From: Haplodiscus bocki
Taxonomy: Eukaryota
Reading direction: 5' to 3'
NCBI GenBank assembly: GCA_965655095.1
Contig: OZ296654.1
Coordinates: 94,054,001 to 94,118,000 of the forward strand
Length of the DNA: 64,000 nt
A program made the position numbers and the translations under genes. This document shows positions 51,199 through 55,184 of this stretch, in pieces; positions within the stretch are counted from its first letter, which is position 1, and the number at the start of each line of letters is the position of its first letter. The notes under the pieces are model-generated. The model was not told where the DNA came from, did no database searches, and worked only from the letters and a program-made list of their open reading frames with translations.

Positions 51199-51597
51199 CT
51201 GATCAGTGATGACGATAATCATGAAAAGCAAGGATAACTTGTAAATCCAGAAGAGGCAATTTTGAAGTCAACTTTTTTTTGCAAAACTTCAGTTGGCACT
51301 TCATGCCTACACAAACAAAAATGGTTCGGACAAACAAATTTTGTGCAAAAATTCTGTCTTAGGAACACTATTTTCATTCGTTAGAAACTTGAACTTGTGA
51401 GTTGCCAAATACTGTCAAACCGAAAGGTATCAAGTGTTGAGTTCAGATGAAGCGAAAAAGTCAATGATTTTGAAAACATAGAGACCACAAGTGATAGTCT
51501 TTGAAACGTGGGCAAAATTCCAAAAGCAACAGACAGTTAAGTTTAAGTCACTCATCTGGTAATCTTTGAAAAATGACCATCACTGAAGTTTACCCAC

Positions 51598-51859
51598 CCA
51601 GCTTGATTTCTTCCAGCCCGGGCACAATATCGAACAGTTTGTACAGCTGTTCATTGGTGAGAGAAGAGTCGTATCTCACGACCAAGTCTCTGTGAGGAAG
51701 ACCCAAAATGGTGGATGCCATCATATTCTGTTCCCATGTTAATTTCCCACAGACTGATGGGTTTTCCGGGAATACAGGAGTACACCCGGCACTAACAGAA
51801 CTACTCTGGGGAGAGGGTTTCCCGCCGAAAGTTGCGAGTTTGGCTGAAGATGCTGTACA
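51598..51859 (-). CDS. RBM45: RBM45-like internal exon (first half of RRM3)
   Basis: Manual translation RDLVVRYDSSLTNEQLYKLFDIVPGLEEIKL (RBM45 FDIVPGLE motif); donor G|gtgggt at 51598/51597; acceptor at 51859 or 51852. Confidence 0.8.
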
Positions 51860-52923
51860 CTTTTTTAGTGATGTCCATTTAACTTCACGTAATATTGATC
51901 AATCATTTTGTGGTTAAAAAAAGAGTCGTAATGAAACAAAAAATACATTATTTACCCAAAGGTCAACGATCTTAGTTCAAAAATAGGACACTCTTGGAAA
52001 GTTCGGAGTCAAGCATTGAAGAAAATTTACGCTTCCAGACAATGTGCCAGAAATAAACTTTCGAATTTTAACGTATTTCCAATTGTCACTAACAGTTTTC
52101 AAATTATTATTCATTGGCTCATGGACGTTTTGAATACCTAATCTTCTCACTCCGTAAGATATGCTATCAAGGTTGCACGAGAGAATCTAAATGAAAAATT
52201 TCATGGCAAAAAGTTCTTGTCTGGCGTTGCTTGAACATAGAACATGACTAAAAATGGCAATTCACATTTTTGAGACTAAACTGAATCATTCAAGTTTGAA
52301 AATTGTTGCATCTTTCAAAAAATTTAAAGAACCACTTGAACTACCCACTAAATGACTCTATTGTTGTAAATCTTTGTAGTTAATGAACATGCAAATCATA
52401 GTAATGTAGAACTTTCTCGTTAAAACAATTAATTGTCTAGCTTTGAGATCGACAGGTTTCAAGTTCGATCACTCCTATCGCCATGGCTTTTTTACGTTTC
52501 AGTTAACTCTCTTTGCCACGGTAAGCAATGCAAACTTTGCAACAAACCACAAATGGCCATTCGAGTGTTCATTAACACAGGCCCGTGTAACTCCGTGATA
52601 ATTTCCGCCTTCCAAATTGCGGAAGAAAGGTTAAAATGCCTTAATTCGAACTAAAAATGTGCAAGCTTGCATCCAAAATCTTTTTTTTTGCAGAAAAGCC
52701 TAAATTTAGACAATAAAAACTATTTTTTTTGAGAAAGACGACAGCTAGACGCATTCTACGGGAAATTTGGAAAAAAATGGAGAAAATTTTTTGCGTGCAC
52801 TTTTGCTTCATCGTGCAATTGGCAAAGCTGGTGTAAAGAATCTGAATGTTGAACAAATGATTTTCCTTCCAAATATGAAACATTGGGCTGAAAATAATAA
52901 ACTAAAAAAGGGACATCACTTTC

Positions 52924-53185
52924 CTTAACGGTATAATCACTAGCCGGACAGGTAGCAGCGATAACCGGGTGGAACCTGGCTACAGTGTTTGTTTCGACAG
53001 CCTTCGCAGCGGAAGAGGGTTTTTCGAACTTGATGATAGCGCTGCCACTCGGCTCCAAAGTGGCGCTGTTCCTCACTATGTTCACAAACTCTATCGTCCC
53101 GAACTCAGAGAAGTGTGCATTGAGAGAGTCTTCCGTATCCGTGGGTTGCACCGAAATGCGTAGCTTTTTCAGTTTATCCAGATAC
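52924..53185 (-). CDS. RBM45: RBM45-like internal exon (RRM2); 3' boundary ambiguous (52930, 52924 or 52920)
   Basis: LRISVQPTDTEDSLNAHFSEFGTIEFVNIVRNSATLEPSGSAIIKFEKPSSAAKAVE; acceptor ggcag|GTAT at 53186/53185. Confidence 0.8.
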
Positions 53186-54437
53186 CTGCCAGATTATTCA
53201 AAAATTAGTAATTCAAGTACTACCGTTTTTCGACAAATATGAATCGATTAGCGCCGACGATTTTTACTAGAAATTGATTTCGAATGTTTATCGAATGTTG
53301 GTTCATTTTTTGGCAGCAAAAACACCAGTGTAGCTATAATGTAGATGCAGCAAATATATAAATTTGATGCATTTGTCCAAATACCTGCGAAAATTTTCAT
53401 CTAAGAGCCCGGCTAACTCCTCCGGGATATTTTCCGCCACAAAAATTTTCTAAGAAAAGCGTTGGAAAAAACTAAGTAAAGTGCATTTTTTAACATTTTT
53501 TGATTTTTATCAATTTCTATCACAATTTTTATCGGATAAAACTAAATTACTTTTCAATCAGTGAAAAATTTTCCCATTGAGCAAAAAATTGTTTCAAAAC
53601 TCAAAAATTCCTGGTCAAAAAACTCAAAAACGCAAAGTTTATGAGTTAGACAATTTTTTGAATTAGACGTGAATTTTGGAAAATTTTACGTTCTTTTCGA
53701 GAATCGATCACGCAACCGTTGTAATACAAGATACACACATATTGCATTTACCCCTATGTCAACCAACCTTCACCGAGCGTCGAAGTGCACATTAAATTGT
53801 ATCGTGCAATTGGAGGCAATATTTATGTTAAAAAAACTGAATGTTGAATGAATGATTTCCTTCTGTATATTGAAAATATGGGCGGGAAATAAAAATACAT
53901 CACGAATGAAAAATTTGTCTCGCAATAGTCTCGTCTCATCGTTATATATACAAACTAGCGTACTGTTCACGCAGTAAGTCCAGATTGCTGAGTAATCGTA
54001 CGATTTTCATCAAATAAAATCTTTTTCTATTGTGACACTCTAAGGTTCGGCAAAAATGACATTTTGAGCCAACCTTTTGACTCCATATATATTTCAAACA
54101 ATATTTCTGTAATGGGAGAAGAGAAATCGTGAGAAAAGCAAATATTTATTTCTGCATAATGGCGCAAACTGGAAACAAGTACTTCTTCCAATTTTTGACC
54201 AAAATACTTTTCCAGTAGTAAAATGTGAAATCACTATTTCGGTTTCACTTTTATTTTTAAAAAGAATCTTGTGAAACTCATTGTATCAACCCCGTTACAG
54301 CTTTTCCTGACAATTTATAAAATTAACTGTATCCCGAACACTGACTGCCTAAGACACATTGAATATCGCATTTTTTCAAGCGATCCCCTTTAGCACGAGC
54401 AGCTAGTTGATTAATTAATTAATTAATTAGGAAGTAC

Positions 54438-54679
54438 CTGCTTTGCTCTGTCTCATCTGGAGGAACCTCTTCATTCACAGGATTGTTGTTACTACCCGTA
54501 GCTGTCCCAGAACTATTGGAGGGGTTGCGTGCTAATCTGGCCTTGAGGGTTTTGCCTTTCAAGAGGGGAGAGAATTCGTTCACTGCTTCCAATGCTCTCA
54601 ATGCCGGGTAGGATGAAGTGAAAGTGACGAAAGCACAGCCTTTGTTCACTTTAGTTTGTTTGTCTTTGATGATGAAAAC
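54438..54679 (-). CDS. RBM45: RBM45-like exon (C-terminal half of RRM1); upstream exon not found in window
   Basis: VFIIKDKQTKVNKGCAFVTF (RNP1)..ALRALEAVN..GKTLKARLA; donor GCAG|gtac at 54438/54437, phase 2, in frame with the next exon. Confidence 0.8.
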
Positions 54680-55184
54680 CTTCAACATAATTGATAAATC
54701 GGAAAATATTTTTCATTAGCAAGGCCCATTCTGAAAAAAGCACAAAAACATCGTGCCCTAACATCACATATATTCTTTTGGCTAAAGCCGAAAACGTCAA
54801 TGAATTTATCTTCCTAGATCGACTATTTTTTGTTTTTACAATTTTCCCGAAAAAAATTAATGCCTGAGCTCTTGAGAGTTTCAGAAATTCGCAAAAAAAG
54901 TGGCTCGTGATTCTCATACGAACACTTCTCATGTTCCGAGCGTATCCAACTTTCCGAAATGTAGTGGTTAGAGCACACAGAGGTGTCAGTTAGATCCAAC
55001 AAACCGGGACCTGTTTCAGTCGGCTCTGCCCGTATGGCTCAAAAAATAACTGGTAGCACCTTTGAGAATTTTCGCTTTCCTGACAAAATGTTTAAAATAC
55101 TATTGTTCTTGTTCTCGTAATACTATCGTCCCATGAGGCCAAAAATTTCGCAGAGTGCTTTTGCTACGATATAAACTCCCTTAG

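What the first reader, a model, noticed from the sequence alone, without database searches (positions are those of the whole stretch)
51852..52932. Intron B: candidate non-canonical GA-AG intron with two alternative terminal pairings
Seen: three in-frame solutions: ACC|gttaag (52929) or AAG|gaaagt (52923) to aaaaaag|TGT (51860), or A|gtgatg (52919) to tacag|CA (51853). Only the GA donor satisfies the 8-nt TSD geometry (2 + 6), aligns AAG at both junctions, and matches AG|GURAGU at every position except +2. The 3' end GGACATCACTAAAAAAG can pair for 10 bp with either AGTGATGTCC or the adjacent CTTTTTTAGT; the second pairing would cover the acceptor. Known: GA-AG introns occur in some animals such as larvacean tunicates. 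Inference: the stem may enable a non-canonical donor or act as a switch.
Basis: partly seen in the sequence, partly recalled or inferred. Interest (0 to 1): 0.72.

Follow-up and report, generated by a model that had tools for sequence, protein, structure and literature searches.

The report
Transposon-born intron with GA start
An intron in an acoel worm's RNA-binding-protein gene was created by a small hAT-type transposon. A related worm has the normal GT start at this exact spot and this genome has GA, so it is either a rare GA-AG intron or splicing has moved to a neighbouring GT; no RNA data exist to decide.

Summary
Three in-frame splice solutions exist, and both terminal pairings are present (13/14 and 10/10).

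The 13/14 stem is the terminal inverted repeat of a hAT-like MITE family (YAGTGATGTCCATTT). Other copies of this family have 8-bp target-site duplications. The element spans 52921-51866, so it fills the whole intron apart from 2 nt at one end and 6 nt at the other. It carries a nested SINE-like repeat.

Orthologues in Symsagittifera roscoffensis and a Convolutriloba-like acoel are single ORFs without introns. A closer relative (contig L090) has an intron at the same codon boundary. There it reads AAG|GTAAGT...GCAG|, and it aligns column for column with the window's AAG|GAAAGT...AAAAAAG|.

The gene is under strong purifying selection, so the intron must be removed productively. GA sits in an otherwise perfect donor with a GT 6 nt upstream, as in the FGFR GA introns.

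No RNA run exists, and two GT routes remain possible. My odds are:
- GA-AG about 0.5
- GT(52919)-CAG(51853) about 0.25
- GT(52929) about 0.12

The "switch" idea is unsupported: -7.6 against -16.1 kcal/mol, and the second pairing is not conserved.

Earlier notes of this scan flag other GA donors on other DNA of this genome. I partly checked one of them.

The parts
52924..53185 (-). Exon 2 (RRM2) up to the codon AAG that precedes the GA donor
   Evidence: Pfam RRM_1 E=4e-11. 53-55% identical to acoel orthologues P0001 and P0002. 77-82% identical to relative L090.
52928..52929 (-). Candidate donor 1: ACC|GTTAAG. The GT is the Val codon, 6 nt upstream of the GA.
   Evidence: In frame with the acceptor at 51860. 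Weak match to U1. GTC at the same place in L090.
52922..52923 (-). Candidate donor 2: AAG|GAAAGT (GA), positionally orthologous to AAG|GTAAGT of the relative
   Evidence: No differences in 4 DNA runs from two samples.
52918..52919 (-). Candidate donor 3: A|GTGATG, a GT inside the transposon's TIR
   Evidence: In frame only with the CAG at 51853.
51866..52921 (-). hAT-like MITE (1056 bp) that makes up the intron apart from 2 nt and 6 nt
   Evidence: Its ends match the family TIR CAGTGATGTCCATTT with 2 and 1 mismatches. The family has 90 exact 14-mer hits against 18 for the control. Other copies have 8-bp TSDs of 6-8/8 (L046, L065, L068, L071).
52907..52921 (-). 5' TIR AAGTGATGTCCCTTT. Its first base is A instead of C, which completes G(T/A)AAGT.
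51866..51880 (-). 3' TIR AAATGGACATCACTA
   Evidence: A decayed homologue AATTGGACACCGC lies at the same place in L090.
52922..52929 (-). Upstream 8-mer (TSD1) GTTAAGGA
   Evidence: Read from the sequence. GTCAAGGT in L090.
51858..51865 (-). Downstream 8-mer (TSD2) AAAAAGTG; only 3/8 match TSD1
   Evidence: Read from the sequence.
52581..52903 (-). Nested SINE-like repeat of about 320 bp, antisense to the gene, with its A-rich tail next to the 5' TIR
   Evidence: More than 1,100 first-look candidates, 40 scored at 74-79% identity. Boundaries from the alignment of 30 copies. Very high depth in DNA runs.
51881..52580 (-). Interior of the element, essentially single-copy
   Evidence: Only three weak 85-110 nt matches elsewhere in the genome. 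No Rfam family above noise.
52901..52910 (-). CTTTTTTAGT, 5' partner of the alternative 10-bp pairing
   Evidence: (I21), -7.6 kcal/mol.
51860..51869 (-). ACTAAAAAAG, 3' partner of both pairings, ending in the AAG acceptor
   Evidence: The AG aligns with the AG of L090's GCAG acceptor.
51853..51855 (-). Alternative acceptor CAG, 7 nt downstream
   Evidence: In frame with donor 3.
51598..51859 (-). Exon 3 (linker and first half of RRM3). Its 3' part is 41/41 aa identical to L090, with 19 codons that differ only synonymously.

Best explanation
Intron B is a transposon-born intron. A non-autonomous hAT-type element (TIR YAGTGATGTCCATTT, 8-bp TSD) landed in the linker-coding part of an RBM45-like three-RRM gene of an acoel. 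The target 8-mer held AG|GT at offset 6. The first copy therefore supplied the donor (2 intronic nt) and the second copy supplied the acceptor (6 intronic nt). A C-to-A change of the first TIR base completed a perfect AAG|GTAAGT donor. A related acoel still has this state. In this genome +2 is A. I think the intron is most likely still cut at the ancestral sites, as a U2-type GA-AG intron (AAG|GAAAGT...AAAAAAG|TGT). U1 and U6 pairing at all other positions would carry recognition, possibly with some use of the GT 6 nt upstream, as in the FGFR genes. Shown: the transposon identity, the family TSD, the positional orthology with a GT-AG intron, the absence of introns in more distant orthologues, and selection on the gene. 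Inferred: the birth geometry and the present use of GA. Odds: transposon origin and orthology about 0.85; GA actually used about 0.5.
For: TIR family and 8-bp TSD. The element fills the intron. Relative L090 has ACC GTC AAG|GTAAGT where the window has ACC GTT AAG|GAAAGT. Its acceptor AG stands in the same column after a decayed 3' TIR, 20/33 identical without gaps. Both junctions are phase 0. The orthologues in S. roscoffensis (L109) and a Convolutriloba-like acoel (L091) are uninterrupted ORFs. Purifying selection: over 222 aligned codons, 109 differ only synonymously and 31 change the amino acid, so a productive splice must exist. GA is present in both sequenced samples. Every donor position except +2 matches the consensus; the other two donors pair with U1 over only about 4 bp (sequence). 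An AAG acceptor is also the only AG available for the exon that starts at 54679 of the same gene. Precedents: the FGFR GA donor depends on a GT 6 nt upstream (PMC4176328, PMC7072748); in the GA-rich animals the GA is flanked by AG upstream and A downstream (PMC7072748). At a second locus of this genome (DHPS-like gene, C8), an element with a related TIR (CAGTGATT.AATC) is flanked by GCTAG|GAA and ACCAG|GAG. Splicing at AG|GA...AG|G gives a junction colinear with Pfam PF00809.
Against: There is no RNA evidence at all. Two in-frame GT routes exist. In most animals +2A donors stall before exon ligation. No U1 gene has a compensating A7-to-U change. The acceptor AAAAAAG has no pyrimidine tract, is followed 7 nt later by a CAG, and lies only 5-6 nt after a branch-site-like CACUAAA. 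The two 8-mers match only 3/8, so the TSD geometry rests on the family rule and on the relative, not on this copy. The direction of change (GT to GA or the reverse) cannot be set without an outgroup. The DHPS-like gene may be decaying: there is a frame change inside its first exon.
Confidence: 0.5

Rival explanations
1. Splice-site shift. The ancestral donor was killed by the T-to-A change at +2. The intron is now removed as a canonical GT-AG intron from the GT inside the TIR (A|GTGATG, 52919) to the CAG at 51853. The protein then reads ...TVKETSSAK..., a net change of -3 nt.
For: In frame. Uses GT and the preferred CAG. CACUAAA lies 12-13 nt upstream of that CAG and could be its branch site, while being too close to the AAG. 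Both ancestral consensus letters (donor +2 T, acceptor -3 C of the relative) are lost here, as expected if those sites are no longer used.
Against: The donor GUGAUG pairs poorly with U1 and U6 and lies inside the 14-bp stem. This route needs donor and acceptor to move together. The rest of the old donor is still perfect. AAG acceptors are used elsewhere in this gene. A compensating in-frame AG within 13 nt is expected by chance in about a quarter of cases.
Confidence: 0.25
2. The upstream GT (ACC|GTTAAG, 52929) is the working donor, joined to the ancestral acceptor at 51860. This drops Val-Lys from a variable linker. It corresponds to the FGFR VT-minus route used alone.
For: In frame. Only one mutational step from the ancestral state. 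The GT is conserved in L090. Four U1 genes carry U6-to-A, which pairs with +3U.
Against: Very weak site: C at -1 and mismatches at +5 and +6. The GT is conserved simply because it is a Val codon. Val-Lys is conserved in L090.
Confidence: 0.12
3. The two species gained their introns separately, by parallel insertion of related MITEs at the same AAG|G site. In that case the relative's GT says nothing about this genome's ancestral donor.
For: The window TIRs are only 3/30 away from the family consensus, although exon synonymous divergence from L090 is high. Both L090 arms share CCAATT/AATTGG where the consensus has CCATTT/AAATGG. Most introns of this gene are species-specific.
Against: Same codon boundary, and the same C-to-A change at the first TIR base. 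Conserved ACGTG upstream of the 3' TIR. L090 is richer in GC at third codon positions, so much of the divergence may lie on its branch.
Confidence: 0.15
4. The terminal stem is a chance inverted repeat in an ordinary old intron and not a transposon.
For: The flanking 8-mers match only 3/8. The interior is single-copy.
Against: Chance frequency 2.5e-4. Both arms match a defined genomic TIR family. Two more introns in the window carry the same TIR. Distant orthologues have no introns.
Confidence: 0.03

Closest known systems
Introners: DNA-transposon-derived introns whose splice sites come from the TSD (Huff et al. 2016; Gozashti et al. 2022, PMC9860276; 2025, PMC12130899)
   Same: A TIR element equals the intron. 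Both splice sites are recruited from the duplicated target, so the mRNA is restored. The intron is absent from orthologues.
   Different: This is not a specialised high-copy family. There are about 70 intact TIR copies, and AGGT-TIR junctions are not enriched. It has a hAT-type 8-bp TSD. The host is an acoel; neither of those two papers contains the words acoel or Xenacoelomorpha. The 2022 paper found introners in only two animal groups.
GA-AG introns of vertebrate FGFR genes (Brackenridge et al. 2003, as summarised in PMC4176328 and PMC7072748)
   Same: A GA donor in an otherwise consensus context, with a canonical GT exactly 6 nt upstream and in frame.
   Different: The upstream GT here is a weak site. 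The downstream intronic elements that FGFR needs were not examined. Use of GA is unproven here.
GA-AG-rich genomes of Eurytemora affinis and Oikopleura dioica (PMC7072748)
   Same: AG|GAA context. Notes from other windows of this genome suggest the pattern recurs here.
   Different: No RNA-supported count exists for this genome. No U1 variant fits GA.
MITE-derived non-canonical introns of Fritillaria borealis (Henriet et al. 2019, summarised in PMC11282704)
   Same: Species-specific introns derived from transposon insertion with non-GT starts.
   Different: In Fritillaria the common ends are AG-AC and AG-AT. Here the other transposon-born introns that I examined are canonical (EMC1 intron, intron C).
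hAT-superfamily MITEs
   Same: TIR starting with YAG, 8-bp TSD, variable non-coding interior.
   Different: No autonomous partner was identified here.

Membership tests
hAT-type MITE | Terminal inverted repeats shared with a multi-copy family | tested here: met
   15-mer with 2 and 1 mismatches to CAGTGATGTCCATTT. 90 genomic hits against 18 for the control.
hAT-type MITE | 8-bp target-site duplication | tested here: inconclusive
   Family copies show 6-8/8. This copy shows 3/8.
hAT-type MITE | Autonomous element encoding a hAT transposase with the same TIR | not tested
   One pair of TIRs about 8 kb apart (L036) was fetched but not analysed.
Transposon-born intron (introner-like) | Element ends coincide with intron ends | tested here: met
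   2 nt and 6 nt (or 7 nt) outside the element, depending on the splice solution.
Transposon-born intron (introner-like) | Intron absent at the homologous site in other species | tested here: met
   L091 and L109 are uninterrupted ORFs. The closer relative L090 has the intron.
Transposon-born intron (introner-like) | Removed from the mRNA | not testable with these tools
   No RNA run. Inferred from purifying selection.
U2-type GA-AG intron | GA at +1/+2 with consensus at the other donor positions, AG at the 3' end, in frame | tested here: met
   AAG|GAAAGT...AAG|, open frame.
U2-type GA-AG intron | Junction seen in RNA | not testable with these tools
   the runs are genomic contigs only.
U2-type GA-AG intron | No canonical in-frame alternative nearby | tested here: not met
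   Two GT routes are in frame.
FGFR-type GA donor | Canonical GT 6 nt upstream | tested here: met
   ACC|GTTAAG|GAAAGT.
FGFR-type GA donor | Downstream intronic elements that support GA use | not tested
   The elements are not defined for this lineage.
RNA structural switch | Two mutually exclusive pairings of comparable stability, conserved in relatives | tested here: not met
   -16.1 against -7.6 kcal/mol. L090 has neither the T-run nor the A-run.

The most novel reading that the evidence does not exclude
This acoel lineage routinely removes MITE insertions from coding exons at the boundaries set by the target-site duplication, even when these read AG|GA instead of AG|GT. That would make it a third animal lineage with frequent GA-AG introns, after one copepod and one larvacean. 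The TIR stem may help to bring the ends together. In this reading, transposon-driven intron gain and a relaxed 5' splice-site code arose together.
Probability: 0.3. Interest if true: 0.8.

Novelty: new member of a known kind. Interest (0 to 1): 0.62.

Why it matters
The locus shows intron gain by an ordinary hAT MITE in a bilaterian. One gene has no introns in two acoels and has five or six, partly different, introns in two others. It also offers a clean natural test of whether a perfect-context GA donor works in an animal. The same site is GT in a sister species, the gene is under selection, and the three possible mRNAs differ by 3-6 nt, so one RT-PCR would decide. If GA is used here and at the other flagged loci, acoels join the very few animals with a relaxed donor code. 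Gene annotation of these genomes with GT-only models would then be systematically wrong.

Tried and rejected
RNA evidence:
- The look-up of sequencing runs listed only four genomic runs of one study.
- Read laying confirmed that they are DNA contigs with no junction that skips the intron. This also gives no support for DNA-level excision of the element.

Protein searches:
- Word searches with exon 2 and exon 3 found nothing, or only the L090 ORF. No transcript-derived protein is available.

Leads that failed:
- A second genomic AGGAAAGTGATGTCC (C7:94148534) looked like a paralogue but is an unrelated coding stretch.
- Junction motifs AGG(T/A)-TIR and AGGTNN-TIR are not enriched over their controls, so this is not a specialised introner family.
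- U1 genes: no A7-to-U variant.
- Rfam: nothing in the intron.
- The linker protein sequence is too variable in distant orthologues to choose among the three products.
- A search for the DHPS intron's 3' end by TIR+TSD pattern failed. It was later found through the next exon.

Limits reached:
About 20 TIR copies and the whole DHPS locus were therefore not examined.

Full report
**What is there.**
The finding lies in a minus-strand gene for a three-RRM protein (Pfam RRM_1). Its best full-length relatives are uncharacterised proteins of the acoels Symsagittifera roscoffensis (XP_063720573) and Convolutriloba macropyga. The genome is 1.5 Gb and is evidently that of an acoel-type worm.

Exon 2 ends near 52924 and exon 3 begins near 51859. 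The GA site reads AAG|GAAAGT.

Both terminal pairings exist:
- 52907-52920 with 51867-51880, 13/14;
- 52901-52910 with 51860-51869, 10/10.

In random segments of the window, the first kind of pairing occurs at 2.5e-4 and the second at 3e-3. Contigs of four DNA runs from two samples are identical to the window at both intron ends.

**What the stem is.**
The 14-mer AGTGATGTCC(A/C)TTT occurs 90 times in the genome, against 18 for the reversed control. It is usually preceded by C or T.

I fetched 49 copies and looked for the inverted partner of each. Many are short elements of 124-1,500 bp flanked by 8-bp direct repeats:
- L046, 8/8;
- L065, L068 and L071, 7/8;
- several more at 6/8.

This is a hAT-like MITE family with the TIR YAGTGATGTCCATTT. 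Intron B's arms differ from that consensus at 2 and 1 of 15 positions. The element spans 52921-51866, which is the whole intron apart from 2 nt and 6 nt.

Inside the element, positions 52903-52581 are a nested SINE-like repeat of about 320 bp. It gave more than 1,100 first-look candidates, lies antisense to the gene, and has its A-rich tail next to the TIR. The remaining 700 bp are single-copy, and no Rfam family matches there.

The same TIR bounds two other introns in the window:
- The EMC1 intron noted earlier by the scan (s1-359294) has a perfect 8-bp TSD, GTACCTGT, next to GAGTGATGCGCATTT.
- The next intron of this gene (51597-51199) has CAGTGATGGTCATTT 12 nt after the donor and CATCACTG 5 nt before the acceptor.

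**Comparative evidence.**
The S. roscoffensis gene (L109) and the Convolutriloba-like gene (L091) are single uninterrupted ORFs.

A closer relative lies on an ENA contig (L090; 77-100% amino-acid identity per exon). It has introns, but only some of them are shared:
- It lacks the window's intron at 54437-53186.
- It has two introns of its own, one inside the window's exon 2 and one inside the window's exon 3.
- The one inside the window's exon 3 appears to be a GC-AG intron.

At intron B the two species agree:
- L090 reads ACC GTC AAG|GTAAGTAACC where the window reads ACC GTT AAG|GAAAGTGATG.
- At the 3' end, L090's ACGTG..AATTGGACACCGCATATGCAG| aligns without gaps with the window's ACGTG..AAATGGACATCACTAAAAAAG|. 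The match is 20/33, with the AG in the same column.
- Both junctions are phase 0.

The first TIR base is A in both species, which turns GT+CAGT into GTAAGT. That geometry does not follow from this copy's own 8-mers, which share only AAG.

**Must it be spliced?**
Over 222 aligned codons between the window and L090, 109 differ only synonymously and 31 change the amino acid. The 41 residues after the linker are identical despite 19 codons with synonymous differences. The gene is functional, so a productive splice exists.

**Which splice?**
No RNA run of this organism is available, so what follows is inference.

For GA:
- Seven of the eight other donor positions pair with canonical U1, and +4 to +6 fit U6. 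The two GT alternatives pair over about four positions.
- There is a GT exactly 6 nt upstream. This is the arrangement on which the FGFR GA donor depends (PMC4176328, PMC7072748).
- The AG|GAA context is that of the GA-rich animals (PMC7072748).
- The only AG available for the exon starting at 54679 is also an AAG, where L090 has CAG. AAG acceptors therefore work here.

Against GA:
- +2A normally blocks exon ligation.
- No U1 gene compensates. Seven are canonical, four carry U6-to-A, one carries C9-to-U, and none carries A7-to-U.
- Both consensus letters of the relative (donor +2 T, acceptor -3 C) are lost here, which is what one would expect after a shift to GT(52919)...CAG(51853).
- CACUAAA would be a good branch site for that CAG and lies too close to the AAG.

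My odds are: GA-AG about 0.5 (possibly mixed with the -6 GT), the TIR GT with the CAG about 0.25, the -6 GT alone about 0.12, and the rest open.

**A second locus.**

One exon ends ...GCTAG|GAACAGTGATTCAATC. The next begins after ...GATTTAATCACTGACCAG|GAGG. This is a MITE with a related TIR and 8-mers GCTAGGAA and ACCAGGAG (5/8).

Splicing at AG|GA...AG|G gives ...ENKARRYYELGG..IDPGI, which is colinear with Pfam PF00809. The only in-frame GT route would delete eight residues that align to the profile. This supports working GA donors in this genome.

However, that gene shows a frame change in its first exon, so it may be decaying. I count the check as partial.

Other notes (s1-376812, s1-359551, s1-354141, s1-366646) flag further GA or non-canonical cases. 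I did not test them.

**The switch idea.**
The alternative pairing has -7.6 kcal/mol against -16.1 for the TIR stem. It consists of a T-run beside the nested repeat and the A-run of the second 8-mer. It has no counterpart in L090. I see no support for a switch. Whether the TIR stem itself helps splicing is open.

One oddity remains. This copy's TIRs are only 10% away from the consensus, although its 8-mers have decayed and synonymous divergence from L090 is high. Possible causes are a slow window branch (L090 is richer in GC at third codon positions), selection on the stem, or parallel insertion. L090's two arms share CCAATT/AATTGG where the consensus has CCATTT/AAATGG.

**Novelty.**
Transposon-born introns and GA-AG introns are both known. 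An acoel example was not found in the papers I could search. Neither was an orthologous GT/GA pair at one transposon-born intron between two species.

The scan has flagged GA donors elsewhere in this genome, on other DNA. This report adds the comparative anchor and the identity of the transposon family.

Noticed in passing
window 53186-54437 (minus strand): The intron between RRM1 and RRM2 (CAG|GTAC...GGCAG|GTAT, flanked by the 7/8 direct repeat GCAGGTAY) is absent from the relative L090, where the coding sequence runs straight through. It looks like a lineage-specific gain with the 4+4 geometry seen in the EMC1 intron. It contains two high-copy repeats.
   Followed up: partly
window 51199-51597 (minus strand): Intron C carries the same TIR family: CAGTGATGGTCATTT 12 nt after the donor G|GTGGGT, and CATCACTG 5 nt before the acceptor ATCAG|. 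The 8-mers do not match. L090 has a decayed homologue of the 5' TIR.
   Followed up: partly
G000 U1 genes, e.g. C4:50868059-50868221, C5:34243659-34243826, C5:39950183-39950350, C5:34083544-34083708: Four of about 15 U1 snRNA genes have the 5' end AUACUAACCUG (U6-to-A), which would pair with donors that have U at +3 (GUU...). One gene has C9-to-U.
   Followed up: partly
L090:13804-16614: The relative has its own intron inside what is one exon in the window. Exact restoration of ...TWEQ|NMMAST... requires CAG|GCATGG...GACAG|AAC, a GC-AG intron. A solo TIR-like piece at L090 14825-14848 matches the window's 3' TIR plus flank at 22/25.
   Followed up: partly
window 51902-52283: In the second sample (run X4) a 2,280-nt contig follows the window up to 51901 and then continues with unrelated sequence. 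Coverage returns at about 52284. This is a structural polymorphism inside intron B.
   Followed up: no
window 54680-54682 (acceptor before the exon starting at 54679): The only AG available upstream of the RRM1b exon is TTGAAG|GTT, an AAG acceptor. L090 has TTCCAG| at the same place.
   Followed up: partly
G000:C8:55820373-55825922: A DHPS-like gene is split by a MITE with a TIR related to this family. The junction is colinear with the Pfam profile only with AG|GA...AG|G. There is also a frame change inside its first exon (GESSRPGTPA* followed by ..SPEDGKRVFSELLEGL in another frame).
   Followed up: partly
G000:C3:41435979-41451720: The variant AGTGATGTCCCTTT recurs about every 980 bp (some gaps of about 1.96-2.05 kb) in one orientation, which suggests a tandem array that contains this TIR-like word.
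   Followed up: no
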